A DNA stretch of 64,000 bases. Origin: Ostrea edulis (Eukaryota). Where the stretch lies: positions 20,150,001 through 20,214,000 of the forward strand of contig NC_079167.1 of NCBI RefSeq assembly GCF_947568905.1. The letters are read 5' to 3'. A model generated the notes under the pieces. The model saw only the letters and a list, made by a program, of their open reading frames with translations. It did not search any database and was not told the DNA's origin. The position numbers and the translations under genes were made by a program. This document shows, piece after piece, positions 234-60,292 of this stretch (positions within the stretch are counted from its first letter, which is position 1; each line of letters begins with the position of its first letter).

Positions 234-1419
234 TTAAGAGTTATGGCAGCGGTGGTTACGGAGGTAGCGGACACGGAGGGGCACTCGGTGGGGGAGGCTT
301 CGGTGGTTTAGGAGGAGGTGCCCTGGGTGGAGGCCTCGGAAGCGGTGGCGGACTTGGAGGAGGACTAAGCTCCGGCGGACTAGGAGGAATTAGCTATGGT
401 GGGCTAGGAGGACCAGGCTCCGGCGGATTAGGACTAGGCTCTGGCGGACTAGGACTAGGCTCCGGTGGACTAGGAGGAATTAGCTATGGCGGACTAGGAG
501 GACCAGGCTCCGGCGGATTTGGATTAGGTTCTGGTGGTCTAGGAGGATTAAGAGGTCTAGGAGGAGGGTTAAGAGGAGGTTCAGGCCCGGGAGGATTTGG
601 AGGCTACTACCCAGGAGGTGGAAGCCGCAGTTATTACTATTATATTCAATACATCATCTACTTGTTGAGAATATTGGGACCCTTCTATGGAGGTCCTATT
701 GGCGGCGGCGGCGGTTTTCCATATGGTGGAACTGGTGGCATTTCCTACGGAGGGGGATTCCCAAGGGGCGGATTAGGTGGAATTGGAGGCGGATTAGGTG
801 GAATTGGAGGCGGATTAGGTGGAATCGGAGGCGGATTAGGTGGAATGGGCGGCGGATTAGGTGGAATCGGAGGCGGATTAGGTGGAATTGGAGGCGGATT
901 AGGTGGAATCGGAGGCGGATTAGGTGGAATGGGAGGCGGATTAGGTGGAATCGGAGGCGGATTAGGTGGAACTGGTGGTATTTCTTATGGAGGTGGATTA
1001 GGTGGTATCGGCGGTGGCAGTCTCGGTGGATTCGGTGGCATCGGTGGTGGTAGCCTCGGTGGTACTGGAGGCGGTTTCAGTGGTTTAGGTGGTCTCGGCG
1101 GGAGTGGTGGATTTGGTGGACTAGGAGGGGGACTTGGCGGTGGACTAGGAGGAGGACTTGGCGGTGGACTAGGGGGAGGACTTGGCGGTGGACTAGGAGG
1201 TATTGGAAGTGGAGGAGGTTTTGGCCACGGAGGAGGTCACGGGGGATATCCACGTACGGTTCCTTCATACTTTATAAAGTAGTGAAAACAATAAAGCGCA
1301 AAGAAATTTACATTGTAAAATTTTAACGGTACACAAACGAGTACTTCTTACAGATAATATATTCATTTTTCGTATATACATTTCAATGGTTTTATTTTTC
1401 AGGAAAGAAGTACTATTGA
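234..1419 (+). CDS. G1: shematrin-like Gly-rich secreted structural protein, 5'-partial (signal exon upstream of window)
   Basis: Acceptor ttacag| at 233; frame open from 236 (KSYGSGGYGG...), so well upstream of the track's TTG at 662. Internal Tyr block SRSYYYYIQYIIYLLRILGP, then (GGLGGIG)n. Donor c|gtacgg after 1253, acceptor ttttcag| at 1402, micro-exon 1403-1419 gives ...GGYPRKKYY*. AATAAA at 1487. Family label rests on Gly repeats plus a basic/Tyr C-terminus, as in pearl-oyster shematrins (RKKKY-type). Confidence 0.85.
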
Positions 1420-1989
1420 TTGCAATGAACGCCCAGTAACGACGCCCATCATCAAATCATCGTAGAAAGGTGTATGTGTTTGTAGTAATAAATATCTGCA
1501 AGTTTCTATTGTAGTAGTTTTCATGTTCATTTCTTCAAACTGATGAATAATTGACGACAATATCGATGAAAAAGCAGTAAAATGTGTTTAAAAAAAGAAA
1601 GAAAGAAAGAAAAAAACCCACAACGACAAGCTCCTTATTGTGACCAATTCAATATTGGTGCTCCTTGTCCTAAAATCCTGACCATCATCTGTTAAACATT
1701 CTCTAGCTTACAGAATTCAAAAGTGAAAAGCATGCTTATACAAACAGACCAAATCAATGCATTCTCCGATTTTCGAATTCAATGCTAAATAATTGATAGC
1801 GTAGATATGTAAAAATGATTCTCGTGAGTCCACATATTACGTCAGTATTCGAGTCAAAGGAAAAGGTTTTATTGAATTCTCCTAAATTGTCAGATGGTAA
1901 AACAAATTGTCAGAGACTTGGAAAACACGGTCAATATATGTCTCTTCTTCAAAAAACCTGTTGTGGTCATAAACATTTATTCAAATGTA

Positions 1990-3367
1990 TGGTGGCTGAT
2001 TTGTGCCACTTTACAATTTGTCGTTTTGTCGAGGTTTTTTCGAGGTGAAAAGACGACAAAACGATAATAAGCGACTTTTCGCCTCGAAATAACGAAAAGT
2101 CTACAAGACGATAAAATACAGATTTCCCCGTTATTTTGCTATCTGATTTTCTAGGAATTCAATATGAAATTTGCTGTGTTTTCGATAATTATTAATTACA
2201 TTTACAAAAAGGAAACAGCTGAAATTAAATTCTAGTTCTTATGTACTTGTATTCTACTGAAGAAATCTGTTTTCTTTTTTTTTTTAAAGTTATACCAGGC
2301 ATGTTGAATTGGAAGTTGGGATGGGAAGGCACCCTGGTCTCTCCCCTTTTTACAATTAATTATAATTTTCCCTTTATTTTTTACATACAAATTTCATATT
2401 TTCTACATGCAAATTTCGATTGATTTGCCCCCCCCCTCCCCTCTTTTCATTTTTAAAGTAGTAGTTAAAGGTAGTAGATGTTTGAAGTGCTGAATTGAAG
2501 AATACGTACAATGAACTACCCTCCCCCCTCCTACGATGTATAGGATATTGAGATTTGGGCAGAAGTACCCTAAATCCATTTTTTCTTACTTGTCAAGAAT
2601 TTCATTGCAAGTGTGAAATGAATTCCGGCTTCCCCCTCCCCTACTGCGTAGAAGGGGGGGGGGGGGTAGTTAATTGCACGTATTCTTCAATTCAGCACTT
2701 CAAACTCAACTACCTTTCAGTACTACTTTGAAAATGAAAAGAGGGGAGGGGGGGGGGCAATCAATCAAACTTTGCATGTAGAAAATATGAGATTTGTATG
2801 TAAAAATAACGAGAAAAGTAAATTGTAAAAAGGGGAGAGGCCAGGGCCCCTTTCCACTCCAACTTCCAATTCAATATGCCTGGTATAAAATTTACCAAAA
2901 AAAACACAACAACAACAACAACAAAGATTTCTTCAAGTACATAAGATCTATAATTTGATTTTAGCTGTTTCCTTTTTGTAAATTAATTAATAGAGGGTCT
3001 CGAAAAAAAAAAAAGGCGAAAAGACGACAAAATTATGTCGCTAATTTGCGGATTTTGATTGTCGTCTTTTCGCCTGTAATTTGTAGTCTTTTCGTTTTGT
3101 CGTCTTGTAGACTTTTCGTTATTTCGAGGCGAAAAGTCGCTAATTATCGATTTGTCATCTTTTCACCTCGACAAGACGCCAAGCGAAAAGACGACAAATT
3201 AGATCGCTAATTTGCGGGTTTTATTTGTAGTCTTTTCGCCTACAATTTGTCGTCTTTTCGTTCTGTCATCTTTTCGTTATTTCGGGGCTAAAAGTCGCCA
3301 ATTATCGTTTTGTCGTCTTTTCACCTCGAAAAAACGACAAATTGTAAAGTGGCACAATCAGCCACCA
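1990..3367. mobile_element. ~1.4 kb foldback-type non-autonomous DNA transposon, TA-flanked
   Basis: Termini TGGTGGCTGAT...ATCAGCCACCA flanked by TA (1988-89, 3368-69). Outer arms ~1990-2115 vs ~3093-3367 carry CGAAAAGACGACAAA-type repeats. Inner arms ~2190-2535 vs ~2647-2990. No ORF. Confidence 0.8.
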
Positions 3368-3903
3368 TACATATGCCTGCAAGAAGAAATTTCGTTTTCC
3401 CAGTTAAAGAAAATTTCGTAGAACACAAATGTAATACATAAGTTCACAGCAAACTCCCCGTCGAGGCCTCATTACGTCACCTACGAATAGACCTCTCCTA
3501 TGTGACGCACCACAATATACAGATTTGTATATTGTGAGTCCGCGATTATCACGCAGGCAAATAACACTAAAGAAGTAGTTCGCACTTAAAAGTTTGAAGA
3601 TATTGATATTAAGAGCATAAATATAAAAGTATGGATTTTATTTTAAACATGAAATGATCAAAAGATCATTAAAAAGTACGGAGACTCTGTTCAAATTATT
3701 GTGTAAAGTAATGAACTTGATGTTTACGTACTTGTTTTGAAAGTTGTTTACGTTTGACGTTATGTTTTTTCGTCATTCTACAATGACGTCACAGTATACG
3801 CGGCCTAAGAAATCGCTATCCCATAATGCCTAAGTGGAAGAGTTTGGTTTGTGAGCAAACGAACTCTGGTGGAAGTTTGAAGTTCACAGTTCTATGATCA
3901 AAT

Positions 3904-7262: not shown

Positions 7263-7401
7263 NNNNNNNNNNNNNNNNNNNNNNNNNNNNNNNNNNNNNN
7301 NNNNNNNNNNNNNNNNNNNNNNNNNNNNNNNNNNNNNNNNNNNNNNNNNNNNNNNNNNNNNNNNNNNNNNNNNNNNNNNNNNNNNNNNNNNNNNNNNNNN
7401 N
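7263..7401. other. Assembly gap (139 N)
   Basis: Run of N; indicates a scaffolded assembly. Confidence 1.
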
Positions 7402-8588: not shown

Positions 8589-8996
8589 AGAAATGTTTGA
8601 ATTCTTGAGATTTGTGAAGCGTTCATTAATTGTGAGAAATGTTTGAATTCTTGAGATTTGTGAAGCGTTCATCGACTGCGAGAAATATTTGAATTCTTGA
8701 GATTTGTGAAGCGTTCATCGACTGCGAGAAATATTTGAATTCTTGAGATTTGTGAAGCGTTCATCGACTGCGAGAAATGTTTGAATTCTTGAGATTTGTG
8801 AAGCGTTCATCGACTGCGAGAAATGTTTGAATTCTTGACATTTGTGAAGCGTTCATGAACTGAGAGAAATGTTTGAATTCTTGAGATATGTGAAGCGTTC
8901 ATGAACTGAGAGAAATGTATGACTTCTTGAGATTTGTGAAGCGTTCATGAACTGAGAGAAATATTTGAATTCTTGAGGTTTGTGAAGCGTTCATTC
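8589..8996. repeat. Minisatellite, 9 x 46 bp
   Basis: Unit agaaatgtttgaattcttgagatttgtgaagcgttcatcgactgcg at a 46-bp period (8589, 8635, 8681 ... 8957). Confidence 0.95.
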
Positions 8997-12729: not shown

Positions 12730-12893
12730 GATGTTAAAAAAATGTCTTCCTGATCAGAATTCGATTTGCACTTATAATCGAAAATCGATCATTGTACTAC
12801 AATCGTTGTCGTTGTGTAATGAAATAAGTGTATATAAGGCTCTTCCAAACAGTCCATCGCAGTACAGTGGTTCTCCGGAAGATAAACTGACAG
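12730..12893 (+). promoter_or_regulatory. G2 promoter and non-coding exon 1
   Basis: TATATAAG at 12831; CAGT initiator-like site ~30 bp downstream; donor cag|gtatc after 12893; matching acceptor ttttcag| at 13118, just before the ATG exon. Shares GATGTTAAA..CTTCC..TCAGAATT..AATCGAT with the G4-G6 promoters. Confidence 0.65.
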
Positions 12894-13124
12894 GTATCAA
12901 CTATTATGTAAACCAATTCAATATCTGTATGGTTTGATTTTTGGCTTTATCATGTATTGTCGATAATTACGGATTATCTCCCTTGGAAAACTCAAAAGCC
13001 CGATTCATTTGGAACTTTAGATTTTGTCTTTGAAATAGCTTTAAAAAGTCCAACATGTAAAAGAGATTTCCGCGCCGTCACTCTATACACTAGTTTATCT
13101 TGAGAATATATTTTTCAGAAAACC

Positions 13125-15007
13125 ATGCTGAAGGAATTCTGCCTGCTGCTTTTGGTCACATATGTGGCGGCTACCTATAACATAGGTAAGATTCCATATT
13201 TTCACCTAATCTCTGACCTATTATATAGGTAAGATTCTATATTTTCACTTAATCTCTGACCTATAACATAGGTAAGATTCCATATTTTCACTTAATCTTT
13301 GATAAAGTCCAATATTCAATGATACATTTTTAAACGATTATCATGCTTCTTTACTTTCACAGGTTACCCCTCCACACCAAGCTATCCAACCCCGACCTAC
13401 CCCAACAGTGGATATCGTTATGTCGTCTACGTCCAATACCTCTACTATTTGTACGCTGTGTATGGACCCAACTCCGTACAATATCTCCAGTATTACTACT
13501 ATTTAGTCAGACTGCACATCATCCCATACGGATTCAACTTTGGTGGCGGTGGATATCCTCGGTTTAGTGGTAGCAGAATCATCCCATTAGGAGGTAGAAG
13601 TGGAATTATCCCTATTGGTGGAGGTTCAACAGGTGGATTTCCAATTGGCGGTGGATTAGGAGGTCTTCCACTTGGTGGATCTGGCTCTCCATTAGGAGGT
13701 GGTCTAGGCGGTTTACCTTTGGGAGGCGGAGGTCTTGGAGGAGGATTCCCACTCGGAGGTTCCGGATTCCCAAGTGGTGGTTCAGGTTTCCCTCTTGGAG
13801 GAGGTAGTCTAGGTGGTGGTTTCCCTCTTGGTGGATCTGGCTCTCCATTAGGAGGTGGTCTCGGCGGTTCACCTTTGGGAGGCGGAGGTCTTGGAGGAGG
13901 ATTCCCACTCGGAGGTTCCGGATTCCCAAGCGGTGGTTCAGGTTTCCCTCTTGGAGGAGGTAGTCTAGGTGGTGGTTTCCCTCTTGGTGGATCTGGCTCT
14001 CCATTAGGAGGTGGTCTCGGCGGTTCACCTTTGGGAGGCGGAGGTCTTGGAGGAGGATTCCCTCTCGGAGGTTCCGGATTCCCAAGCGGTGGTTCAGGTT
14101 TCCCTCTTGGAGGAGGTAGTCTAGGTGGTGGTTTCCCTCTTGGTGGATCTGGCTCTCCATTAGGAGGTGGTTTCGGCGGTTCACCTTTGGGAGGCGGAGG
14201 TCTTGGAGGATTCCCACTCGGAGGTTCCGGATTCCCAAGTGGTGGTTCAGGTTTCCCTCTTGGAGGAGGTAGTCTAGGTGGTGGTTTCCCTCTTGGTGGA
14301 TCTGGCTCTCCATTAGGAGGTGGTCTCGGCGGTTCACCTTTGGGAGGCGGAGGTCTTGGAGGAGGATTCCCACTCGGAGGTTCCGGATTCCCAAGCGGTG
14401 GTTCAGGTTTCCCTCTTGGAGGAGGTAGTCTAGGTGGTGGTTTCCCTCTTGGTGGATCTGGCTCTCCATTAGGAGGTGGTCTCGGTGGTTCACCTTTGGG
14501 AGGCGGAGGTCTTGGAGGATTCCCACTCGGAGGTTCCGGATTCCCAAGTGGTGGTTCAGGTTTCCCTCTTGGAGGAGGTAGTCTAGGTGGTGGTTTCCCT
14601 CTTGGTGGATCTGGCTCTCCATTAGGAGGTGGTCTCGGTGGCGGAATTGGTGGTGGCTTTCCTCTTGGAGGATCTGGTTTTCCAAGTGGTGGAAGTGGAT
14701 TTCCATCTGGCGATAGCTCCATAAGTTTCACCAGCAGTGGTTCTTCCTTCTCATCTGGCAGTTCTGGATTCCCAAGTGGGGGATTCCCAGGAAGTGGGGG
14801 ATTCCCAGGAAGTGGGGGATTCCCAGGAAGTGGGGGATTTCCAGGTGGATTTAACGGCGGATATTCAGGAGGCCATGGTGGATATAAACCCAAGAAAGGG
14901 TAATTCAAATCATCCTTATGTCATACGAAATTGCATATCATAAAGTATGCATTATCAATTGTCCATTATCATACACTTAAGAATTCTGATTTTTTTTTTG
15001 TAGGTAG
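13125..15007 (+). CDS. G2: shematrin-like Gly/Pro/Leu/Phe-rich secreted protein, 533 aa
   Basis: Exon 13125-13185 (MLKEFCLLLLVTYVAATYNIG, signal peptide), exon 13363-14899 (YP-rich stretch, Tyr domain, six 51-52 aa repeats, Ser linker, GGFPGS repeats, YKPKK), terminal exon from 15004 (G then TAG). All junctions are GT-AG. AATAAA at 15112. Confidence 0.9.
13173..13301 (+). repeat. Triplicated 43-bp unit containing the G2 exon-2 splice donor
   Basis: acctataacataggtaagattccatattttcacctaatctctg x3 (13173, 13216, 13259). Confidence 0.9.
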
Positions 15008-19946: not shown

Positions 19947-20204
19947 TATGGTAAGGTCAATATTGAACGCTCATACTCGGAATGTTTCGGGCACACACAA
20001 TTTACCCAATGCAAAGTTAGCGTTCAATAAATTCTCAGGATATTGAACGCTAACATTCTCTAAATTTTACGCAGATTTTATAATAGACTATTTATTAGCT
20101 ATATAATAAAGTAAAATATTGAGGAGATAGAAACTTCATTTATTAGAGTTCATATAAAATCACTTAATGACAGGATTCTACATAATCTCAGCATCAAAAT
20201 ATAC

Positions 20205-23704: not shown

Positions 23705-23862
23705 TTTGACTTCCGTGTTCGGAATAGTACGAGTCATCAGAATCAATCAAAGCTTTTTGTACCGAACTGATGCCAGGTCGTTGATCGGTGTGTATATAAA
23801 GGGACCGCTCTCCTGAACCATCACAGTTTGAATCAACATCCCAGAGAAGGACCAACAAACAG
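23705..23862 (+). promoter_or_regulatory. G3 promoter and non-coding exon 1
   Basis: ACTTCCGTGTTC (23709), TCATCAGAATCAATC, TATATAAAGGGACCGCTCTCC (23793), donor cag|gtaaaa after 23862, acceptor ttgtag| at 24276. Confidence 0.75.
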
Positions 23863-24282
23863 GTAAAATGCTTTTCTTATCAGTTCACATTAAATTAAAT
23901 CAATATTATTTCAAATAATTTTGTGATCTTTAACGTTCTTACTATATATTCACACTAACTAATAGTTACCTTATCAAAAATGAAAACGAGATTCTTATTG
24001 GAACGTCCAGTAAAGCTGCCTATTAAAAATATGTAGGTACCACAGTTCATAAACTGGTTCCACGCTGATTGGTGCTGCACACGAGATCGTGATGGTCTCT
24101 TAATTGAATATGATTTGTTGTAGTTTTATACAAATTGGCATTGCTAAATTACATGTGTGTAGTTTCTTTCATCGGATAAATAATTGCAAATCAATCTTAT
24201 ATTTAAATTTTCGAACGCAAATCTTTCTCTAACACAAAGACAAACAATATCTAATTAATGGTTATTTATTTTGTAGATCACC

Positions 24283-25400
24283 ATGTTGAAGGAAGTTTGT
24301 TTTCTGTTAATGGCCACATACGTGGCGGCAACCTATGGCACAGGTATAACTGCAGAATTTCTCTGAATCCTTGATAAGTTCCGTGTTCAATAGAACATTT
24401 TTGTATTACATGCCCGTTTCTTTACTTTCACAGGTTACCCCTCACAACCAAGCTATCCAGCCCCGACCTACCCCAACAGTGGATATCGTTATGTCATCTA
24501 CGTCCAATACCTCTACTACTTGTACGCTGTGTACGGTCCCAACTCTGTACAATACATTCAGTATTACCAATACTTGATCAGATTGCACATCATTCCTCAA
24601 GGATTCTCATTTGGATCTGGCGGATTCCCAGGCGGTATTGGCGGAAGTAGAATTATAGGGGGCGGTAGCGGCATAACCCCAATCGGAGGAGGATATATCC
24701 CAGGTGGTGGTTTCCCAGGAAGCAGCAGAGGATTTCCCGGTGGTAGAGGAGGAAGCTCTCTGAGTTTCTCAAGTGGATCTGGATTTTTCTCTGGATCCGG
24801 AGGCGGTTTCCCAAGTGGCGGATTTCCTAGCGGTGGATTCCCCGGCGGACTCTCCTCCGGCGGATTCCCCGGTTCCGGAAGCGGTTTCCCAAGTGGCGGA
24901 TTTCCTAGCGGTGGATTCCCAGGCGGACTTTCCTCCGGCGGATTCCCCGGTGGATCTTTCCCCGGATCTGGAAGTGGTGGGTTCCCAGGCGGACTCTCAT
25001 CTAGCAGTTTTTCTAGCGGTAGTTCCTTCCTGAGCAGCGGCAGTTTAGGTGGTGGTCCTGGCGGTATCGGAGGTGGTCCTGGAGGAATCGGTGGAGGAAT
25101 AGGAGGAATTGGAGGAGGAATAGGAGGAGGAATTGGAGGAGGAATAGGAGGAGGAATTGGAGGAGGAATAGGAGGAATTGGAGGAGGAATTGGAGGAGGA
25201 ATAGGAGGAATTGGAGGAGGAATAGGAGGAGGAATTGGAGGAGGAATAGGAGGAAGAATTGGAGGCAGAAAGAAACTTGGTAACCTTATTTTTTTTTTTG
25301 ATAATTGCTCAAAGGTTATGATAGTTTTTTTCTAAAAATTCCAAAGCAAGATTTTGAAAAAGAAAAGTTTTACTATATTTTTATTTTAGGTTTTTACTAA
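24283..25400 (+). CDS. G3: shematrin-like GGFP-repeat secreted protein, 305 aa
   Basis: Exons 24283-24343 (MLKEVCFLLMATYVAATYGTG), 24434-25279 and 25390-25400; ends ...RKKLGFY*. Phase-1 GT-AG introns. AATAAA at 25479. Confidence 0.92.
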
Positions 25401-26090: not shown

Positions 26091-26148
26091 CATAGTTTAT
26101 CTAAAGGTGTGACGCGTTCCCTTTATTATTATGAAGGCACAGTAGGGA

Positions 26149-32270: not shown

Positions 32271-32305
<35 letters not shown>

Positions 32306-35964: not shown

Positions 35965-36127
35965 GTTAAACACTTCCGTGTTCAGAATTGCATAACTCAT
36001 CAGAATCAATCGATGTATTTGTGTTCTGATCCGCTGGCGAACATATAAAAGGACCGCTCTCCCTAGTTCTTGTAGTTTGGGCTGCCATTCAAAAGAAGAA
36101 ACAACCAAGAACAGAAACAACCAAAAG
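35965..36127 (+). promoter_or_regulatory. G4 promoter and non-coding exon 1
   Basis: ACTTCCGTGTTC (35972), TCATCAGAATCAATCGAT, TATAAAAGGACCG (36044), donor aag|gtacc after 36127. About 650 bp upstream shared with G5 and G6. Confidence 0.75.
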
Positions 36128-36282
36128 GTACCTTCAGCTTTTCTTTTCAATTTGTTCCTATTTTGCCAGACTTAATTATTGGATGGCTATTCGTCTTATC
36201 ATTTCATATTTTAGTTCTAAGAACTGCCTTTGGTTTAAATCAAACGATCTCTAACTGATGGTTATTTATTTTGTAGATCACC

Positions 36283-37471
36283 ATGCTGAAGGAAGTTTGT
36301 TTTCTGTTAATGGCCACATACGTGGCGACAACCTATGGCACAGGTATAACTGCAGAATTTCTCTGAATCCTTGATAAGTTCCGTGTTCAATAGAACATTT
36401 TGATATTGCATGCCCGTTTCTTTACTTTCACAGGTTACCCCTCACAACCAAGCTATCCAGCCCCGACCTACCCCAACAGTGGATATCGTTATGTCGTCTA
36501 CGTCCAATACCTCTACTACTTGTACGCTGTGTACGGTCCCAACTCTGTACAATACATTCAGTATTACCAATACTTGATCAGATTGCACATCATTCCTCAA
36601 GGATTCTCTTTTGGATCTGGCGGATTCCCAGGTGGATTCCCAGGTGGTATTGGTGGAAGTAGAATTATAGGGGGCGGTAGCGGCATAACCCCAATCGGAG
36701 GAGGATATATCCCGGGTGGTGGTTTCCCAGGAAGCAGCGGAGGATTTCCCGGCGGTAGAGGAGGAAGCTCTCTGAGTTTCTCAAGTGGATCTGGATTTTT
36801 CTCTGGATCCGGAGGCGGTTTCCCAAGTGGCGGATTTCCTAGCGGTGGATTCCCCGGCGGACTCTCCTCCGGCGGATTCCCCGGTTCCGGAAGCGGTTTC
36901 CCAAGTGGCGGATTTCCTAGCGGTGGATTCCCAGGCGGACTCTCCTCCGGTGGATTCCCCGGTTCCGGAGGCGGTTTCCCAAGTGGCGGATTTCCTAGCG
37001 GTGGATTCCCAGGCGGACTCTCCTCCGGCGGATTCCCCGGTTCTGGAAGCGGTTTCCCAAGTGGCGGACTTCCTAGCGGTGGGTTCCCAAGTGGACTCTC
37101 TTCCGGCGGATTCCCCAGCGGATCTTTCCCCGGATCTGGAAGTGGTTTTCCAAGTGGTGGATTCCCAGGCGGACTCTCCTCTAGCAGTTTTTCTAGCGGT
37201 AGTTCCTTCCTGAGCAGCGGCAGTTTAGGTGGTGGTCCTGGTGGTATTGGAGGTGGTCCTGGAGGAATCGGTGGAGGAATTGGAGGAGGAATAGGAGGAG
37301 GAATTGGAGGAGGAATAGGAGGAGGAATAGGAGGCAGAAAGAAACTTGGTAATCTTATTGTTTGTTTGTTTTATAATTGGTTAAAGGTTATCATAGTTTT
37401 TTCTAACAATTGCAAAGCAAGATTTTGAAAAAGAATAATTTTACTATATTTTTATTTTAGGTTTTTACTAA
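36283..37471 (+). CDS. G4: shematrin-like GGFP-repeat secreted protein, 328 aa
   Basis: Exons 36283-36343, 36434-37348 and 37461-37471; ends RKKLGFY*. AATAAA at 37549. Confidence 0.92.
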
Positions 37472-45837: not shown

Positions 45838-45852
45838 TTATTTAGTAACTAA

Positions 45853-47676
45853 AAGTCATTCACAGCATTACAATAGTATGTCTACTGAATACCGACCAAG
45901 TCATTCACAGCATTACAACAGTCTGAATAACAACCAAGTCATTCACAGCATTATAACAGTCTGAATACCAACCAAGTCATTCACAGCACTATAACAGTCT
46001 GAATACCAACCAAGTCATTCACAGCACTATAACAGTCTGAATAACAACCAAGTCATTCACAGTATTACAACAGTCTGAATAACAACCAAGTCATTCACAG
46101 AATTACAACAGTCTGAATACCAACCAAGTCATTCACAGCATTATAACAGTCTGAATAACAACCAAGTCATTCACAGCATTACAACAGTTTGAATACCAAC
46201 CACGTCATTCACAGCATTACAACAGTCTGAATACCAACCAAGTCATTCACAGCATTATAACAGTCTGAATAACAACCAAGCCATTCACAGCATTATAACA
46301 GTCTGAATACCGACCAAGTCATTCACAGCATTACAACAGTCTGAATACCAACCACGTCATTCACAGCATTACAACAGTCTGAATAACAACCAAGTCATTC
46401 ACAGCATTATAACAGTCTGAATAACAACCAAGTCATTCACAGCATTATAACAGTCTGAATAACAACCAAGTCATTCACAGCATTATAACAGTCTGAATAA
46501 CAACCAAGTCATTCACAGCATTACAACAGTCTGAATAACAACCAAGTCATTCACAGCATTACAACAGTCTGAATAACAACCAAGTCATTCACAGCATTAC
46601 AACAGTTTGAATACCAACCAAGTCATTCACAGCACTATAACAGTCTGAATACCAACCAAGTCATTCACAGCACTATAACAGTCTGAATAACAACCAAGTT
46701 ATTCACAGCATTACAACAGTCTGAATACCAACCAAGTTATTCACAGCACTATAACAGTCTGAATACCAACCAAGTCATTCACAGCACTATAACAGTCTGA
46801 ATAACAACCAAGTTATTCACAGCATTATAACAGTCTGAATACCAACCAAGTTATTCACAGCATTATAACAGTCTGAATACCAACCAAGTCATTCACAGCA
46901 TTATAACAGTCTGAATACCAACCAAGTTATTCACAACATTATAACAGTCTGAATACCAACCAAGTCATTCACAGCATTACAACAGTATGAATACCAACCA
47001 AGTTATTCACAGCATTATAACAGTCTGAATACCAACCAAGTCATTCACAGCACTATAACAGTCTGAATACCAACCAAGTTATTCACAGCATTATAACAGT
47101 CTGAATAACAACCAAGTCATTCACAGCATTATAACAGTCTGAATAACAACCAAGTCATTCACAGCATTATAACAGTCTGAATACCAACCAAGTTATTCAC
47201 AACATTATAACAGTCTGAATACCAACCAAGTCATTCACAGCATTATAACAGTCTGAATACCAACCAAGTTATTCACAGCATTATAACAGTCTGAATACCA
47301 ACCAAGTCATTCACAGCACTATAACAGTCTGAATACCAACCAAGTTATTCACAGCATTATAACAGTCTGAATACCAACCAAGTCATTCACAGCATTATAA
47401 CAGTCTGAATAACAACCAAGTCATTCACAGCATTATAACAGTCTGAATACCGACCAAGTCATTCACAGTATTACAACAGTCTGAATAACAACCAAGCCAT
47501 TCACAGCATTATAACAGTCTGAATACCGACCAAGTCATTCACAGCATTACAACAGTCTGAATACCAACCAAGTCATTCACAGCATTACAACAGTCTGAAT
47601 AACAACCAAGTCATTCACAGCATTACAACAGTCTGAATAACAACCAAGTTATTCACAGCATTACAACAGTCTGAAT
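45853..47676. repeat. Satellite, ~48 x 38 bp
   Basis: Unit caagtcattcacagcattacaacagtctgaataacaac, head-to-tail with no spacers. Confidence 0.97.
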
Positions 47677-49584
47677 ATTTCTATCACGGGTATGACAGCA
47701 ATATATCACGGAAATCCAATAAATTTAAACTACGTAATTAAAAACTACATATGTACATGTTCTGCATCACAAGTTTTTAAATAAGTTTCAGTGCATCACA
47801 ACTTTTAAGTCTCATCTTTCAGCATGAGAGTACTAAATTAACTTATTCAATGTATAACGAAAGGTTACGCAGTGAGGTAGGTGCCCCCGAGTAATCAGTG
47901 CACCGTACTACCCATAATTCTATAGTTTTCACACTATGGCGTCACAATATAAAAGTACGTCACTAGTTTATAGTTGTGTCGCGGGGAAAATGTCATGATA
48001 TTTTACCGTTAGTTACTACCGTTATCAAATGTTCAAGCTGTACATGTGTAAATCTGTTCGTCAGATGATTCATTTCCAGTTTTCTTTGATAATAGATGTC
48101 TCAAGTTTTTATATATAGTGTGCACTAGTTACAATAATCTTTATATTACATTGTGACTTTGAAATCGCCCCCGATGTGTATAGTCATTTAGAATAAAGAG
48201 GGTCAATCCTGTATACATATCGACTTGGTACAGGTGAAAAGTGATGATATCTTACTTCGATCAAGGTATTTTCCAAAAGGTACCTATAGTTGCAGATGGA
48301 GGATTTTGATACAGAAGGTAGGATTTTTTTGCCTCGTTTAAATAAAATTTGGCAGTGAGTGTGGGAAAACTCAACATTTCAATCGAGATTATGAAATTGC
48401 TAAATAGAAAGGATATTGTACTGCTCCAGATCACTTTCTACAGATCAAGTCTAAACTGCAAATGATTTGAGTGCATTTTTCACCTGTGTTGAGGTGATAA
48501 ACGACTGAATGTATAGCGGATAAAAATAGCTCTACATCACTTGTATGATGATGTAATAGTTACGGTAAGCGAGGGAATTCCCATGTGATACGATGTTTAT
48601 GTATTGACAAACGATTTGTAGTAAAATATGCGACGCTTGGAAGAATTTTACTTTAATTTGAATATGCAGTTATTACTTGTTAATTTACTCGGTACACCTT
48701 ATTAACCTCACTGCGTACTGAACAATTTTGAATAATTTAAATCAAAATAAATGTTTATTGTTAAAAATGATGATGTTAGCCCAAAGTAGATAAAATTCAC
48801 ATGACAGGTAAATGATTAGAAACTGACCTTTTTGCAGAGTTATCTGCCCTTTGTAAAAAATAAGAAAAATATAATTTTCTGAGAATGTTTGTAATCTTAT
48901 TTCATATTTTCATGACGTCACCATCAGAGTGAAAAATTCACAAGGAAGACGTTAAACAATATACAACTAACAACCATATTTCATAAACAGAGAGTGTATG
49001 TAACTTTTCACCAAGAGATTTGTATGTAAAATATGATTTAAAAAAGATTAATAAAACGTGCGCTTCCCATACACTTCAACGTAATATTCTAGGTGAAATA
49101 AATCTAACAGTAATCAAAATTATGAAACTTCCTCTGTTGGATTATTTTTATTTCATGAACCCTTCAAAATTATACCATGGTTACAAAAATCCCATCATCC
49201 ATTTACTAGATATGAAATATGGCCATGATACATTAAATACCTTAAACAGTATTAAACGAATCGTACTAAGGATAATGATTTACAGAAAATGAATAATTTT
49301 CCATTAAACATATGAATGATAGTAACAATTCTTGTCATAAAACGTAAAGAAAAAAGATAGAAAAAAATCTTACAAACACGATGAAAATGAATTGAGAAAT
49401 ATTTTCGAAACAAGAAGGAATCCATGTATGAAACCACTCTTAAGACTGTCGTTGTCTTTTGTTTAATTTTACAACATTCTGACGAAAGTCAGCAAATAAG
49501 AAGCATCAAGAACTTCAAATCTAATGCAAACAAAAATTTCTTGGTTTTCTTAACAGTCGACATGCATAATCAAGCCTTTGATGT

Positions 49585-49745
49585 TAAACACTTCCGTATT
49601 CAGAATTGCATAACTCATCAGAATCAATCGATGTATTTGTGTTCCGATCCGCTGGCGAACATATAAAAGGACCGTTCTCCTTAGTTCTTGCAGTTTGGGC
49701 TGCCATTCAAAAGAAGAAACAACCAAGAACAGAAACAACCAAAAG
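49585..49745 (+). promoter_or_regulatory. G5 promoter and non-coding exon 1
   Basis: CTTCCG (49591), TCATCAGAATCAATCGAT, TATAAAA (49662), donor after 49745. Confidence 0.75.
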
Positions 49746-49900
49746 GTACCTTTAACTTTTCTTTTCAATTTGTTCCTATCTTGCCAGACTTAATTATTGG
49801 ATAGCTATTCGTCTTATCATTTCATATTTTAGTTCTAAGAACTGCCTTTGGTTTAAATCAAACGATCTCTAACTGATGGTTATTTATTTTGTAGATCACC

Positions 49901-51044
49901 ATGCTGAAGGAAGTTTGTTTTCTGTTAATGGCCACATACGTGGCGGCAACCTATGGCACAGGTATAATTGCTGAATTTTTCTGAATCCTTGATAAGTTCC
50001 GTGTTCAATAGAACATTTTTGTATTACATGCCCGTTTCTTTACTTTCACAGGTTACCCCTCACAACCAAGCTATCCAGCCCCGACCTACCCCAACAGTGG
50101 ATATCGTTATGTCGTCTACGTCCAATACCTCTACTACTTGTACGCTGTGTACGGTCCCAACTCTGTCCAATACATTCAGTATTACCAATACTTGATCAGA
50201 TTGCACATCATTCCTCAAGGATTCTCTTTTGGACCTGGCAGATTCCCAGGCGGATTCCCAGGTGGTATCGGTGGAAGTAGAATTATAGGGGGTGGTAGCG
50301 GCATAACCCCGATCGGAGGGGGGTTTATCCCGGGTGGTGGTTTTCCAGGAAGCAGCGGAGGATTTCCCAGCGGTAGCAGAGGAAGCTCTCTGAGTTTCTC
50401 TAGCGGATCTGGTTTTTTCTCTGGATCCGGAAGTGGTTTCCCTAGTGGTGGATTCCCAGGCGGACTTTCCTCCGGCGGATTCCCCAGCGGATCTTTCCCT
50501 GGATCCGGAAGTGGTTTCCCAAGTGGTGGATTACCTAGTGGTGGATTCCCAGGAAGTATCTCTTCTGGTAGCATTTCCAGCGGATCTGGTTTTTTCTCCG
50601 GATCCGGAAGCGGTTCCCCAAGTGGTGGATTCCCAGGCGGACTCTCCTCTGGTGGCTTCCCCAGCGGATCTGATCTTTTCCCTGGATCTGGAAGCGGTTT
50701 CCCTAGTGGTGGATTCCCAGGAGGACTCTCCTCCGGTGGATTCCCCAGCGGATCTGGTTTTCCAAGCGGTGGATTATCCAGTGGAGGATTTCCAGGCGGA
50801 CTCTCCTCTAGCAGTTTTTCTAGCGGTAGTTCCATCCTGAGCAGCGGCAGTTTAGGTGGTGGTCCTGGTGGTATTGGAGGTCGTCCTGGTGGTATCGGAG
50901 GAGGAATTGGAGGCAGAAAGAAACTTGGTAATCTTATGGTTCTTTATCATTGCTTTAAGATTTATGATATTTCTTTCTAAAGATTCAAAGCAAGACTTTG
51001 AAAAACATAAATGTTACTATATTTGTATTTCAGGTTTTTACTAG
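49901..51044 (+). CDS. G5: shematrin-like GGFP/Ser-rich secreted protein, 315 aa
   Basis: Exons 49901-49961, 50052-50927 and 51034-51044; ends RKKLGFY*. AATAAA at 51122. Confidence 0.92.
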
Positions 51045-53597: not shown

Positions 53598-54964
53598 TAC
53601 ATCATCATTATTCATTTTATCATCCAGACCTTTTATTAATCCTTTAGAAAGTGTGAGGCCTGGCTGTCCCGTCGTGATCGAAGTCTTTCTTTCCATACTT
53701 GGCGATACTGCACATTCTAGGTCACGTTTTACTAACTCATCCCGCGTCAGCTTTGGTCTGTCTGGAACTCGATATCTAGTGACATTCAGTGTACGAACCT
53801 GTGATATCCGACCTGTACTACGCTCAACATAGCCTAACCATCCCAGCCTACATGTCTGGAGAATATCGTTAATGTTTCTCATGGAAGGCGAGGATAACGA
53901 GGAGCGATCAATCTCACAACTCCCACTAGGAATACAAAATAAAGAGTCGGGCAAACACGAACTCCTGGACATACCAGAGGTGGAACCAGGTGCCCAGGAG
54001 GAGCAAGCATCCTGTTAAGCCCTGTTAAGCTAATTAATGAAATTTGAAGATAACGAACAGTTATCAAAATCATAACTCCTGTAAGCGACTCAAAAGGGGA
54101 CATTATTTCAGGATTGACAAGGCAAATTTATCCTATCTTGGCTTTGTCGTTGCGCATCAGTTTCCTTAGAGTGGAGGTTGTTAATGCCCATGTTTCAGAA
54201 CCATATAGCAACACGTCTAATGTAGATTGGATATAGACGGTCCCTGGTTGTGATTGCCAGATGTTTGCTCGTCAGGATTGGAAGAAGTTCTCTGAATTTT
54301 TTCCAAACAGACTTACACCGTGTTGTTGCTACAAGTTCACAGCCATCGCGAGAGTGTTCACAAGGTAACAGAAGTCCGCTAAAACTTCAAGTGTCACCTC
54401 ACCAATTTTTACCTCTATCAAAAGGTCGAGCGAGTCCATGACAACGCGGGCACTTGTATCTTGGATTAGATTTAAGAGGACCATTGATTCCACTACATTT
54501 CTTATGGACCCAGCGTGAGCAGCTGTTACAGAAGACGGAGTTCCTGTCTCTGGCTTTTAGACAGACTGCATATGGGTACTTTCCTTAACTTCTCATAAAT
54601 TCCATATTCAGCCTGATATCATCTTTTTGGTCTTACCCATGTTGACCTTGAATCCTTTCTCCTCCAAGCTCTTCTTCCACTTGGCCACTCTTTCAATCAG
54701 AGACAGCTGCTAGATCATTAGTATATAGGAGCTTTTAATTAAGGGCATCTTTACGAAATTGGATTGACAGCGCTTCCAGAACAACGATAAACAGCAACGG
54801 ACTCAAAACAGATCCTTGATGAACACCAATATTGACATTAAACTCATCCCTGTAGCAATCTCCTACTCGAACACGGCTTCTCGCATTAGGGTATATGATC
54901 TACACTTTATTAACTAATCCATTCTTTAACACGTAACTTAAGCATCGCCCACCAGATGGATTTA
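53598..54964 (-). mobile_element. 5'-truncated RTE (BovB-like) LINE with 20-bp TSD and a nested Naiad 3' fragment (53884-54085)
   Basis: Minus strand encodes GVHQGSVLSPLLFIVVLEALS, WKKSLEEKGFKVNMGKTK and RLGWLGYVER. (ATG)-like tail near 53600. aaaatccctctactcacgga at 53578-53597 and 54965-54984. Confidence 0.8.
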
Positions 54965-55345
54965 AAAATCCCTCTACTCACGGAAATGAATTAAAAAATC
55001 TCTCCACTCACGGGAATGAATTAAAAATATCTTCTCTCATGGGAATGGATTAAACGTATCTTCTCTCATCGGAATGGATTAAACATATCTTCTCTCTCAT
55101 TGGAATGAATTAAAATTATCTACTCATGGGAATGAATTTAAAAATCTCTCTACTCACGGGAATGAATAAAAAAAAAACCTCTACTTCACGGGAATGAATG
55201 AAAAAAATCTCTCTACTCACGGGAATGAATTAAGAATATCTCTTCTCACGGGAATGGATTAAAAAACCCTCTACTCACGGGAATGAATTAAAAATTCTCT
55301 CCTCTTATGGGAATGAATTAATAATATCTCTTCTCACGGGAATTG
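54965..55345. repeat. Minisatellite, ~13 x ~30 bp
   Basis: Unit aaaaatctctctactcacgggaatgaatt. Confidence 0.9.
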
Positions 55346-55590
55346 ATTTCAAAATAGAAAGAAGATTTTTCACCTTTACTTTACAGATGAGATGAAATCA
55401 ATTTGATCGGAAATGCATATGTACAGGTATTTCCAGAATTTCTGTTGATTTTATCTCTCTTATGATGACTACTTAATCGAAATTTCTCATGATGACCTTT
55501 TTCAGTTTAATGTTATTATCATTATCATCATCATCACCATCATCATGGAAAAGAATATTGTATTTTATTTCATACAAAAAATCACACAGG

Positions 55591-55810
55591 GAACATACAT
55601 CAAAAGATTATCCGAACATACATCACAAGATATTGAACATACATCACAAGATTATCGAACATACATCACAAGATATTGAACATACATCACAAGATTATCG
55701 AACATACATCACAAGATATTGAACATACATCACAAGATTATCGAACATACATCACAAGATATTGAACATACATCACAAGAAATTGAACATGCATCACAAG
55801 ATTATCGAAT
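55591..55810. repeat. Minisatellite of alternating 21/22-bp units
   Basis: gaacatacatcacaagatatt / gaacatacatcacaagattatc; decayed monomers at ~57030-57190 and ~58160-58270. Confidence 0.9.
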
Positions 55811-56420
55811 ATAGCAACATTTTACACGCCATATCAGCAGGGATTTTAAATATTTCTGTTTTAAAACTGCATTTCTAAAAAATAAATAAGGCAAAATCCA
55901 AAGTATTTAATTCAAAATATTATATTACATAACCACCACTTTCATCTACATCAGATTTATCTGGTATGTTTTTCCCCTTTATAGACGTGCTTTCGATGGC
56001 GATGAACTTGATTACACGACACGATCTATCTATTTAGACTGCCTTACCGCACACGACAATGTTGGAAATTACAAATAGCTTGATAAATGAGATATTGATA
56101 TTGCATTTATTTATAGATAAAAGCTTTGACAGATAAAGGTGAATCATCTGTAATTGAAGACATTTTAAATAAAACTGAAAGTATTTTGCTATATCATGAA
56201 ATGTGTGCATAACACTTTTTAAATCAAAACAAATTACATTTCGCGCTTGTAAGAAACAAATTTCATCTCTTTTTTAAAAAATGCATGAGGGTATTATGAA
56301 ACATCGCAGTTCATACCCTCAAGTATTTTAAAAAATAACAATAGCCGAGTTCAACTTCGTTGCAACTTGGCTAAAAATCATTTTTACATGTATATTTACA
56401 TTCTACTTTCATTTCTGTCG

Positions 56421-56617
56421 CGGTGATCTAGAGGTTAGAGCGTTCGCCCTGCATGCGGAAGGCCGGGGTTCGAATCCCGGCCGCGACAGACCTAATTCTT
56501 TAAAACAGGTAGTGACAATTCCATCGCCAAACGCTCGGCATCAGGTGTGAATGTCACGAGTCCTCGGAGATTACTTTAAAAACGGATGTCCCTAAATTTG
56601 AAGCCCTTCATGGGTCT

Positions 56618-56651
<34 letters not shown>

Positions 56652-58854: not shown

Positions 58855-59003
58855 TAAAGACTTCCGTGTTCAGAATTGCGTACTCATCAGAATCAATCGA
58901 TGTATTTGTGTTCCGAACATATAAAAGGACCGTTCTCCCTAGTTCTTGCAGTTTGGGCTGCCATTCGAAAGAAGAGACATCCAAGAACAGAAACAACCAA
59001 AAG
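58855..59003 (+). promoter_or_regulatory. G6 promoter and non-coding exon 1
   Basis: CTTCCGTGTTC (58861), CATCAGAATCAATCGAT, TATAAAA (58920), donor after 59003. About 10 bp shorter than G4/G5 just upstream of the TATA box. Confidence 0.75.
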
Positions 59004-59159
59004 GTACCTTCAGCTTTTCTTTTCAATTTGTTTGTATTTTACTAGTCTTAATTATTGGATGACTATTCGTCTTATCATCTTATATTTTAGTTCCAAGTTA
59101 TTGCTTTTAATTTAAATCAAACAATCTCTAACTGATGGCTATCTATTTTGTAGATCACC

Positions 59160-60292
59160 ATGCTGAAGGAATTTTGTTTTCTGTTAATGGCCACATACGT
59201 GGTGGCAACCTATGGCACAGGTATAATTGCTGAATTTCTCTGAATCCTTGATAAGTTCCGTGTTCAATAGAACATTTTGATATTGCATGCCCGTTTCTTT
59301 ACTTTCACAGGTTACCCCTCACAACCAAGCTATCCAGCCCCGACCTACCCCAACAGTGGATATCGTTATGTCGTCTACGTCCAATACCTCTACTACTTGT
59401 ACGCTGTGTACGGTCCCAACTCTGTCCAATACATTCAGTATTACCAATACTTGATCAGATTGCACATCATTCCTCAAGGATTCTCTTTTGGATCTGGCGG
59501 ATTCCCAGGTGGTATTGGTGGAGGTAGAATTATAGGGGGTGGTAGCGGCATAACCCCGATCGGAGGAGGATATATCCCAGGTGGTGGTTTCCCAGGAAGC
59601 AGCGGAGGATTTCCCGGCGGTAGAGGAGGAAGCTCTCTGAGTTTATCAAGTGGATCTGGATTTTTCTCTGGATCCGGAGGCGGTTTCCCAAGTGGCGGAT
59701 TTCCTAGCGGTGGATTCCCAGGCGGACTCTCCTCCGGCGGATTCCCCGGTTCCGGAAGCGGTTTCCCAAGTGGCGGATTTCCTAGCGGTGGATTCCCAGG
59801 CGGACTCTCCTCCGGCGGATTCCCCGGTTCCGGAAGCAGTTTCCCAAGTGGCGGATTTCCTAGCGGTGGATTCCCAGGCGGACTTTCCTCCGGCGGATTC
59901 CCCGGTGGATCTTTCCCCGGATCTGGAAGTGGTGGATTCCCAGGCGGACTCTCCTCTAGCAGTTTTTCTAGCGGTAGTTCCTTCCTGAGCAGCGGCAGTT
60001 TAGGTGGTGGTCCCGGCGGTATCGGAGGTGGTCCTGGAGGAATCGGTGGAGGAATTGGAGGAGGAATAGGAGGAGGAATTGGTGGAGGAATAGGAGGAGG
60101 AATTGGAGGAGGAATAGGAGGAGGAATTAGAGGCAGAAAGAAGCTTGGTAATCTTGCATTTCTTTTTCAATTTCTTACAAGATTTAAAGGTTTCTGATAC
60201 CTTATTTTTGTCAAAGGCAAATCAAAATGAATTTTATAAAGTAAGAAGATATGACATAGATGTGTATTTTTATATTTCCAGGTTATTACTGA
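59160..60292 (+). CDS. G6: shematrin-like GGFP-repeat secreted protein, 302 aa
   Basis: Exons 59160-59220 (MLKEFCFLLMATYVVATYGTG), 59311-60147 and 60282-60292; ends RKKLGYY*. AATAAA at 60372. Confidence 0.92.

What the first reader, a model, noticed from the sequence alone, without database searches (positions are those of the whole stretch)
234..60292. Six-gene tandem array of modular secreted Gly/Tyr framework proteins hidden by a four-exon structure
Seen: six same-strand paralogs. G2-G6 share a signal peptide, a YP-rich stretch, a Tyr block, a variable Gly elastomer-like region and a basic/aromatic tail; the partial G1 shows a Tyr block, Gly repeats and the tail. The Gly region differs by gene: G1 GGLGGIG, G2 52-aa FPLGG units, G3-G6 GGFPSG then GGGI. 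Mature proteins have no Cys and essentially no Asp/Glu (one Asp each in G2 and G5). Known: pearl-oyster shematrins are Gly-repeat shell proteins ending in RKKKY-like motifs. Inference: an oyster-lineage family that varies the mechanical repeat while fixing both interaction ends; a framework or elastomer (shell, periostracum or ligament) rather than an acidic Ca-binding matrix. I cannot tell whether it has been described.
Basis: partly seen in the sequence, partly recalled or inferred. Interest (0 to 1): 0.8.

Follow-up and report, generated by a model that had tools for sequence, protein, structure and literature searches.

The report
Oyster tandem Gly/Tyr secreted protein genes
A row of seven neighbouring oyster genes (six in this window) encodes secreted, glycine-rich, acid-free proteins built like pearl-oyster shematrin shell-framework proteins, but carrying a tyrosine-packed module so far found only in true oysters; where they are expressed could not be tested.

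Summary
A seventh lies 2 kb past the window, and G1's first two exons lie just before it. All share one build, read from the DNA:
- a TATA box and a short 5'UTR exon;
- a signal-peptide exon ending in phase 1;
- one large exon;
- a tiny tail exon (unclear only in G2).

Every splice site is GT-AG, and a poly(A) signal follows each stop by 67-104 bases. Main exons are 32-59% Gly, with no Cys, no Glu and 0-2 Asp. The repeats differ by gene. Tails read PRKKYY (G1), RKKLGFY/RKKLGYY (G3-G6) and KPKKG (G2).

The Tyr block occurs only at this locus in the 895-Mb genome. Among 1.84 billion representative proteins it matches only two uncharacterised Magallana gigas models. It is under purifying selection. 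AlphaFold gives a hairpin around GPNS, helical in one run and beta in the other; the rest is disordered.

The assembly gap is intergenic.

Best reading: shematrin-like extracellular framework proteins with a new oyster-specific assembly or cross-linking module. No paper found describes the family.

The parts
234..1253 (+). G1 main exon. In-frame 236-1252, 339 aa, 59% Gly. Has 90-bp and 21-bp repeats and a half Tyr block at about 605-680. Exons 1-2 lie upstream of the window at C4:20149600-20149776.
1403..1419 (+). G1 tail exon (phase 1). Completes ..GGYP-RKKYY-stop. AATAAA at 1487.
7263..7401 (.). Assembly gap in intergenic DNA between G1 and G2, flanked by dispersed repeats. Not part of any gene model. 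Not filled in.
12831..12893 (+). G2 TATA box (12831) and short 5'UTR exon ending at the donor after 12893. Transcription start is inferred, not observed.
13119..13185 (+). G2 signal-peptide exon (ATG at 13125, MLKEFCLLLLVTYVAATYNI), ending in phase 1. A 43-bp unit is triplicated at 13173-13302 and repeats the donor site.
13363..14903 (+). G2 main exon. In-frame 13365-14900, 512 aa. YP stretch and Tyr block at 13365-13550, then six 156-bp (52-aa) repeats at 13671-14638. Ends ..GGYKPKKG with the stop at 14901-14903. A possible donor after 14899 and acceptor before 15004 would give the same protein end.
23793..23862 (+). G3 TATA box and 5'UTR exon (donor after 23862).
24277..24343 (+). G3 signal-peptide exon (ATG at 24283), ending in phase 1.
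24434..25279 (+). G3 main exon. In-frame 24436-25278, 281 aa. Tyr block at 24436-24621, 78-bp repeat x2, long GGGI run.
25390..25400 (+). G3 tail exon. Completes RKKL-GFY-stop. AATAAA at 25478.
36044..36127 (+). G4 TATA box and 5'UTR exon (donor after 36127).
36277..36343 (+). G4 signal-peptide exon (ATG at 36283), ending in phase 1.
36434..37348 (+). G4 main exon. In-frame 36436-37347, 304 aa. Tyr block at 36436-36621, 78-bp repeat x4.
37461..37471 (+). G4 tail exon. Completes RKKL-GFY-stop. AATAAA at 37549.
49662..49745 (+). G5 TATA box and 5'UTR exon.
49895..49961 (+). G5 signal-peptide exon (ATG at 49901).
50052..50927 (+). G5 main exon. In-frame 50054-50926, 291 aa. 84-bp repeat x2.6, short GGGI run, one Asp.
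51034..51044 (+). G5 tail exon. Completes RKKL-GFY-stop. AATAAA at 51122.
58920..59003 (+). G6 TATA box and 5'UTR exon.
59154..59220 (+). G6 signal-peptide exon (ATG at 59160).
59311..60147 (+). G6 main exon. In-frame 59313-60146, 278 aa. 78-bp repeat x3.
60282..60292 (+). G6 tail exon. Completes RKKL-GYY-stop. AATAAA at 60372.

Best explanation
What it is. A lineage-restricted tandem family of seven genes at a single locus in an ostreid oyster genome. They encode secreted, cationic proteins free of Cys and acidic residues, which most likely act as insoluble extracellular framework proteins of the shematrin-like (repetitive, low-complexity) kind.

Shown by sequence:
- Each gene has a TATA box, a 5'UTR exon, a signal-peptide exon, a big exon and a tail mini-exon.
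- The big exon starts with a YP-rich stretch and a 35-40-residue block made almost entirely of Tyr and aliphatic residues around a GPNS turn.
- It continues with 200-450 residues of Gly/Ser/Pro/Phe/Leu repeats, whose unit and copy number differ from gene to gene.
- The protein ends in a short basic, usually aromatic, tail.

Inferred mechanism:
- After secretion, the uncharged Tyr block self-associates as a hairpin.
- Together with the YP stretch, it offers Tyr for oxidative (tyrosinase-type DOPA/quinone or di-Tyr) cross-linking.
- The Gly/Pro-rich middle stays disordered and sets the compliance of the network. Paralogs and repeat-number changes tune it.
- The basic tail anchors the protein to acidic matrix partners or mineral.

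Which structure receives these proteins (prism sheaths, periostracum, hinge ligament or larval shell) is not known.
For: Gene reality:
- Seven intact open frames on one strand, with canonical GT-AG sites, the same intron phases, TATA boxes, and AATAAA 67-104 nt after each stop.
- Signal peptides have hydrophobic cores.
- In the N-domain, G2 differs from G3-G6 at 13-14 synonymous against 8-9 non-synonymous codons of 62, which indicates purifying selection in this frame.
- G7's first 80 residues are 70% identical to M. gigas K1RBK9.
- The M. gigas model A0A8W8MLB6 ends ..KKSGPY, matching G7's predicted tail exon QKSGPY.

Composition and repeats. Using the 2P+G rule from memory, values are about 0.54 (G5) to 0.66; G3-G6 fall just below the 0.6 line cited for elastomeric proteins, and G1, G2 and G7 lie above it.

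Structure: the Gly region has pLDDT below 50. The Tyr block has pLDDT 81-93, with a turn at GPNS.

Restriction: the Tyr block occurs only at this locus in the genome and matches only two M. gigas proteins among 1.84 billion representatives.

Likeness to shematrin:
- PRKKY-type tail and Gly repeats (PMC3896809).
- Tandem arrays (PMC4759782).
- In Pinctada, shematrins and tyrosinases are the most abundant prism-layer proteins, and shematrins are treated as framework proteins (PMC4660305).
Against:
- No detectable sequence homology to any named shell protein. Pfam finds nothing, and the word search with G1 found nothing meaningful.
- Only G1 carries a canonical shematrin tail. G7's tail is barely basic.
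- The fold of the Tyr block is ambiguous: helical hairpin with one alignment, beta hairpin with another.
- G1's kinship with G2-G7 rests on position, gene build and a 17-residue motif.
Confidence: 0.6

Rival explanations
1. These are true orthologues or co-orthologues of the Pinctada shematrin family, sharing common descent and not just a similar build. The Tyr block would then be an ostreid addition, or a loss in Pinctada.
For: - G1 ends in PRKKYY, a listed shematrin signature.
- It has Gly repeats with hydrophobic spacers.
- The genes are tandemly arranged, as in P. fucata.
- Crassostrea genes are already labelled 'shematrin-like protein 1/2' in annotations used by PMC13465682 and PMC12551290.
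Against: - No alignment to a shematrin sequence could be made here, because none was retrievable.
- The Tyr-block profile hit no Pinctada protein.
- PMC4759782 reports no shematrin homologue in C. gigas.
- Low-complexity repeats and short basic tails can converge.
Confidence: 0.3
2. They are secreted Gly-rich cationic proteins with a non-skeletal role, such as host defence (ctenidin or acanthoscurrin-like Gly-rich antimicrobial proteins), mucus, or larval or adult adhesive cement.
For: - They are cationic, Gly-rich, Cys-free and secreted.
- Oyster Gly-rich genes are annotated 'ctenidin-like' or 'glycine-rich cell wall protein-like', and they respond to stress in non-mantle tissues (PMC12040131).
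- From memory, the single PSYPAPTYP stretch recalls the mussel foot protein-1 decapeptide.
Against: - At 280-540 residues with long tandem repeats, and with a wholly hydrophobic Tyr block, they are unlike known Gly-rich antimicrobial peptides.
- The tail signature and the tandem repeat-varying paralogs fit structural matrix families better.
Confidence: 0.2
3. These are not functional genes. The open frames would be by-products of GGN-rich satellite-like DNA, or the copies would be decaying duplicates.
For: - Other frames and the opposite strand are also open across the repeats, for example a 469-aa Pro-rich frame on the minus strand at 13499-14908.
- No transcript evidence was obtained.
Against: - Only the + frame is preceded by a TATA box, a 5'UTR exon and a signal-peptide exon, and followed by a tail exon and a poly(A) signal, in all seven copies.
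- The non-repetitive N-domain shows an excess of synonymous change.
- That domain is conserved at 70% identity in another genus.
- None of the seven copies has a frameshift or an internal stop.
Confidence: 0.05

Closest known systems
Shematrins of pearl oysters (Pinctada; Yano et al. 2006, as described in PMC3896809, PMC4660305 and PMC4759782)
   Same: - Secreted, with Gly-rich repeats that have hydrophobic or aromatic spacers.
- Almost no acidic residues.
- A short basic-aromatic C-terminal signature; G1's PRKKYY contains the listed PRKKY.
- Paralogs differ by gain, loss and shuffling of repeat motifs.
- Genes are arranged in tandem.
   Different: - The conserved YP stretch and Tyr block hit no Pinctada protein in the profile search.
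- Tails of G2-G7 depart from the published signatures (RKKLGFY, KPKKG, QKSGPY).
- Homology outside low-complexity sequence is not demonstrated.
- Tissue and shell-layer location are unknown.
Magallana gigas uncharacterised proteins K1RBK9 and A0A8W8MLB6 (UniProt)
   Same: - They have the same Tyr block (70% identity to G7 over 80 residues), a homologous signal peptide, a Gly/Ser/Pro-rich body and a ..KSGPY tail.
- K1RBK9 holds two copies of signal peptide plus block. That means two neighbouring genes were fused by the gene model, so the tandem array also exists in that genus.
   Different: They are G7-type only. No G2-G6-type or G1-type relative was found. Both are unnamed and appear in no paper searched.
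KRMP (lysine-rich matrix proteins) of Pinctada
   Same: Gly/Tyr-rich region thought to cross-link, and a short basic tail ending in Tyr.
   Different: KRMPs are about 10 kDa with a Lys/Trp-rich basic head. The proteins here have no such head and are 3-5 times longer.
Elastomer-like Gly-rich structural proteins (scallop abductin, plant glycine-rich cell-wall proteins); comparison from memory
   Same: Very high Gly, few charges, Tyr available for oxidative cross-links, and a predicted disordered repeat region.
   Different: - Met is nearly absent (2 in G1, 0 in the others), unlike abductin.
- No sequence relationship was tested.
- A discrete conserved Tyr block is not a feature of those families.
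Other secreted Gly/Tyr-rich 'tail-exon' gene families noted in this genome by the scan (s1-301739, s1-279248, s1-301904; AI notes)
   Same: Small tandem families with a variable Gly/Tyr body, whose tail is added by a separate phase-1 terminal exon.
   Different: Their tail is hydrophobic with an N-x-T site and a final Gly, not basic-aromatic. They are much smaller. Kinship was not tested.

Membership tests
Shematrin | N-terminal signal peptide (secreted) | tested here: met
   G1-G7 each have a separate exon encoding about 18-24 residues with a hydrophobic core. The 10-residue Kyte-Doolittle mean is 2.3-2.7 for G2-G6. No dedicated signal-peptide predictor was available.
Shematrin | Gly-rich repetitive domains with hydrophobic or aromatic residues between Gly runs, and few acidic residues | tested here: met
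   32-59% Gly, with tandem units of 21, 78, 84 and 156 bp. Glu 0 and Asp 0-2 per main exon.
Shematrin | C-terminal signature RKKKY, RRKKY, RRRKY, IRRKK or PRKKY (PMC3896809) | tested here: inconclusive
   G1 reads PRKKYY, which meets it. G3-G6 read RKKLGFY or RKKLGYY, a variant. G2 reads KPKKG and G7 reads QKSGPY, which do not meet it. All depend on unverified splicing of the tail exon.
Shematrin | Detectable sequence homology to Pinctada shematrin orthology groups | tested here: inconclusive
   The Tyr-block profile hit only M. gigas among 1.84 billion representatives. The word search with G1's main exon gave one irrelevant hit. No shematrin sequence could be fetched for a direct alignment.
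Shematrin | Expressed in mantle (edge) and present in the prismatic layer or other shell layers | not testable with these tools
No oyster shell proteome data could be linked to these genes.
Shematrin | Tandemly arranged paralogs (PMC4759782) | tested here: met
   Seven genes on one strand within about 69 kb. G3 and G4 lie in a 12-kb segmental duplication of 90-96% identity.
Ostreid Tyr-block family (K1RBK9-like, unnamed) | Conserved block ..Y(I/V)QYLYYLY..GPNS..QYYQYL.R..(I/L)P | tested here: met
   G2-G7 score E 1e-25 to 1e-34 against the profile. K1RBK9 scores 8e-31 and A0A8W8MLB6 scores 1e-8. G1 has only the first half, matching G7 at 11 of 17 residues, reached by 0 of 5000 shuffles; BLASTP is not significant.
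KRMP | Small (about 10 kDa) protein with a Lys/Trp-rich basic domain directly after the signal peptide | tested here: not met
   Main exons have 0-3 Lys and 0 Trp, and are 278-533 residues long.
Abductin | Gly- and Met-rich decapeptide repeats | tested here: not met
   Met is 2 in G1 and 0 in G2-G7. The definition of the family is from memory.

The most novel reading that the evidence does not exclude
The Tyr block is a new, ostreid-specific self-assembly and cross-linking module: a switchable helix/beta 'tyrosine zipper' hairpin. It would nucleate a quinone-tanned, elastomer-like network. The seven paralogs would be a graded mechanical series for one specific oyster structure, such as the hinge ligament (resilium) or the periostracum or prism sheaths, whose proteins are poorly known in true oysters. 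The family would have been largely missed because gene finders break on it, and because trypsin leaves its body as one peptide of about 190 residues or more.
Probability: 0.2. Interest if true: 0.7.

Novelty: new variant of a known kind. Interest (0 to 1): 0.45.

Why it matters
Repetitive low-complexity framework proteins set the toughness and insolubility of mollusc shells. They have been characterised almost only in pearl oysters, and a published comparison states that shematrins are absent from Crassostrea.

This locus shows that true oysters hold a tandem family with the same overall build: signal peptide, tunable Gly repeats and a basic-aromatic tail on its own mini-exon. It also has a conserved Tyr-packed module that no database family describes.

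If it is expressed in shell-forming tissue, it would give:
- a defined set of candidates for the insoluble, hard-to-digest fraction of oyster shell, periostracum or ligament;
- a natural series of paralogs that differ mainly in repeat type and number;
- a short module to test for self-assembly and tyrosinase cross-linking.

If it is merely another Gly-rich secreted family, it is still a useful correction to oyster gene annotation.

Tried and rejected
1. RNA evidence. The look-up of sequencing runs was asked for window:36040-37480 and window:13040-13680. I did not try again.
2. Pfam on five main exons found nothing.
3. The word search with the Tyr domain found no candidates. With G1's main exon it gave one irrelevant bacterial hit.
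4. The ESM Atlas search on the Tyr domain and on G1 gave no usable hit.
5. The look-up of encoding contigs for K1RBK9 and A0A8W8MLB6 found nothing on record.
6. Paper searches for K1RBK9 and for the motif QYLYYLY returned no papers. McDougall et al. 2013, on shematrin and KRMP evolution, is not held, so shematrin intron positions could not be compared.
7. Foldseek of the hairpin model against the PDB gave only generic helical hairpins, E > 3.
8. An HMM built without G1 does not recover G1's block once HMMER's composition correction is applied. That test is uninformative for such biased sequence, so I used a local-shuffle identity test instead.
9. I rejected the minus-strand and off-frame ORFs inside the repeats as genes. 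They lack a promoter, a signal peptide and splice context.
All searches were made exon by exon, by reference.

Full report
**Where this is.** The window is G000:C4:20150001-20214000 (+) of an 894.8-Mb assembly in 52 contigs. Its closest database relatives are Magallana gigas proteins. Other agents of this scan call the genome the flat oyster (AI notes that I did not check beyond this). I treat it as an ostreid oyster that is not Magallana.

**Observation.**
- Six + strand Gly-rich open frames stand at about 234-1282, 13323-14900, 24394-25332, 36394-37425, 50012-50977 and 59271-60194.
- From the DNA around them, each gene has these parts in order:
  - a TATA box;
  - a short 5'UTR exon ending in AG|GT;
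  - an intron, then an exon holding ATG plus 20 codons of a hydrophobic signal peptide, ending after the first base of a codon;
  - a 90-177-bp intron, then one large exon;
  - a roughly 100-150-bp intron, then a mini-exon that supplies the last 2-5 codons and the stop, with AATAAA 67-104 nt further on.
- All sites are GT-AG with pyrimidine tracts.
- G1's TATA box, 5'UTR exon and signal exon (MMLKLAVLLVVAASTQAS) lie 230-420 bp before the window.

**The assembly gap.** The gap at 7263-7401 is intergenic. It lies 5.8 kb after G1's poly(A) signal and 5.4 kb before G2's TATA box, and both flanks are copies of a dispersed repeat. No frame or intron depends on it. Its true length is unknown and I did not fill it in. 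G1-G2 spacing (12.9 kb) is typical of the array, so nothing suggests a missing gene, though one cannot be excluded.

**Extent of the family.**
- A search of the whole genome with the 62-residue N-domain, and then with a profile, finds only this locus.
- It also finds a seventh gene, G7, 2.1 kb beyond the window's end (TATA box at about C4:20216102; main exon L009:2569-4167, 533 aa). G7 has the same four-exon build, GGSPLGG-type repeats and the tail ..SYPS-QKSGPY.
- No further Gly-rich frames occur in 60 kb upstream or 40 kb downstream. The surroundings are mostly retroelement debris.

**Anatomy of the proteins, exon by exon.** Joined proteins were not built or searched.
- Main exons are 278-533 residues and 32-59% Gly. 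They have 0 Cys, 0 Glu, 0 Trp, 0-2 Asp and 5-9 Lys plus Arg.
- G2-G6 open with YPS(Q/T)PSYP(A/T)PTYPNSGY. A block follows in which about 15 of 38 residues are Tyr and the rest are aliphatic or Gln, centred on GPNS. G7 and the M. gigas proteins share this block.
- G1 has Gly repeats on both sides of a half block, YYYYIQYIIYLLRILGP. It matches G7 at 11 of 17 positions, reached by 0 of 5000 composition-preserving shuffles. It is not significant by BLASTP or against G3. G1's kinship therefore rests mainly on position, strand and gene build.
- Repeats:
  - G1: 21 bp x9.8, plus 90 bp x2;
  - G2: 156 bp x6.2;
  - G3, G4, G6: the same 78-bp unit x2, x4, x3;
  - G5: 84 bp x2.6;
  - then GGGI runs of very different length.
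- Tails are PRKKYY (G1), RKKLGFY (G3-G5), RKKLGYY (G6), KPKKG (G2) and QKSGPY (G7). For G2, the spliced and unspliced readings give the same end.

**Are they real genes?**
- All seven are intact.
- In the non-repetitive N-domain, G2 differs from G3-G6 at 13-14 synonymous but only 8-9 non-synonymous codons of 62. That is purifying selection in this frame.
- G7's first 80 residues are 70% identical to M. gigas K1RBK9.
- K1RBK9 contains signal peptide plus block twice. It is therefore a gene-model fusion of two neighbouring genes.
- A0A8W8MLB6 ends ..KKSGPY, which independently matches the predicted tail exon.
- The long frames on the other strand and in other frames are by-products of GGN repeats. 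They lack all of these signals.
- What is missing is transcript evidence.

**Relatives and names.**
- Pfam has nothing.
- The Tyr-block profile, run against 1.84 billion representative proteins, gives only the two M. gigas entries above. Both are named 'Uncharacterized protein'.
- No paper in the library mentions K1RBK9 or the core motif.
- This genome's own annotation seems to be withheld from the searches. I cannot say whether RefSeq already models these genes.

**Structure.**
- With a nine-row alignment of the domain alone, AlphaFold gives helix 16-33, a turn, and helix 38-49, at pLDDT about 85.
- With the six full main exons, it gives a two-stranded beta hairpin, 17-33 and 38-54, at pLDDT 81-93. 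Everything after residue 60 falls below 50.
- Both runs agree on a hairpin hinged at GPNS and on a disordered body. The secondary structure is undecided.
- The block has no charged face, so a soluble monomer is unlikely and self-association is the natural inference.
- Foldseek finds nothing specific.

**How it probably works (inferred).**
- The proteins are secreted.
- The Tyr block zips molecules together. With the YP stretch, it supplies Tyr for tyrosinase-type cross-linking. From memory, PSYPAPTYP recalls the DOPA- and Hyp-bearing mussel foot protein-1 decapeptide.
- The Gly/Pro/Ser body stays disordered and compliant. By the 2P+G rule, also from memory, its values run from about 0.54 (G5) to 0.66; G3-G6 fall just below the 0.6 line cited for elastomeric proteins, and G1, G2 and G7 lie above it.
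- The basic-aromatic tail binds acidic partners or mineral.
- Paralogs differ mostly in repeat unit and number. G3 and G4 sit in a 12-kb duplication of 90-96% identity. The locus therefore evolves by duplication plus repeat slippage, as described for shematrins (PMC4897951).

**Comparison with what is known.**
- Shematrins are secreted Gly-rich framework proteins. Their C-terminal signatures include PRKKY (PMC3896809).
- They are abundant, together with tyrosinases, in Pinctada prisms (PMC4660305), and their genes are tandemly arrayed (PMC4759782).
- That last paper also states that shematrin homologues are absent from C. gigas. Yet Crassostrea annotations carry 'shematrin-like' names that are used as shell-field or mantle markers.
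- The family here works like a shematrin in build. Membership by descent is unproven, and only G1 meets the tail signature. The Tyr block is a difference.
- It is not a KRMP (no Lys/Trp head) and not abductin-like (almost no Met).

**Verdict.**
- This is a new variant of a known kind of protein.
- Interest is moderate. It would be raised substantially by tissue-specific expression or by recovery of the proteins from ligament, periostracum or shell.

Noticed in passing
outside the window: G000:C4:20216100-20218330 (L009:2100-4330): A seventh family member, G7. It has a TATA box, a 5'UTR exon, a signal exon (MMMMVKIGVLLSVMAATVFAKNL), a 533-aa main exon with GGSPLGG-type repeats, and a tail exon QKSGPY. 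It is the copy closest to the M. gigas proteins.
   Followed up: yes
window 13173-13302: A 43-bp unit holding the end of G2's signal exon and its donor site is triplicated in intron 2, giving three candidate donors. Because 43 is not a multiple of 3, use of the second or third donor would shift the frame.
   Followed up: partly
window 24241-34201 versus 36241-45715: A segmental duplication of about 12 kb, 90-96% identical, carries G3 and G4 together with their downstream retroelement fragments. G5 and G6 share only the gene and about 600 bp upstream.
   Followed up: partly
window 27238-28506 and 44971-45492 (also 33612-34067, 39265-40809): Reverse-transcriptase (RVT_1) open frames and related retroelement fragments fill the spaces between the genes.
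   Followed up: partly
window 45885-47677; 20198-20987; 8589-8994; 54956-55802: Satellite-like tandem arrays: 38 bp x47, 27/85 bp x28, 46 bp x8.8, and 29/88-bp and 21/43-bp arrays.
   Followed up: no
window 56416-56489 (+): A tRNA-Ala(TGC)-like sequence, scoring 38 bits in Rfam and also called by ARAGORN. It lies between G5 and G6 and may be a tRNA gene or a SINE head.
   Followed up: no
window 24436-24600 (Tyr block; same in G2, G4-G6): AlphaFold predicts this block confidently as two helices with one alignment and as a long beta hairpin with another. It may be a conformational switch, or this may be an artefact of shallow alignments.
   Followed up: partly
P0002 (M. gigas K1RBK9): This UniProt model fuses two neighbouring paralogs (two signal peptides and two Tyr blocks) and reads through the tail intron. 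P0003 (A0A8W8MLB6) skips the whole repeat body. Gene finders clearly mishandle this family.
   Followed up: partly
upstream of the window: C4:20141442-20142977 (+): A 512-aa open frame with Cys/His-rich, B-box-like motifs, about 6.6 kb before G1's promoter. It was not analysed.
   Followed up: no
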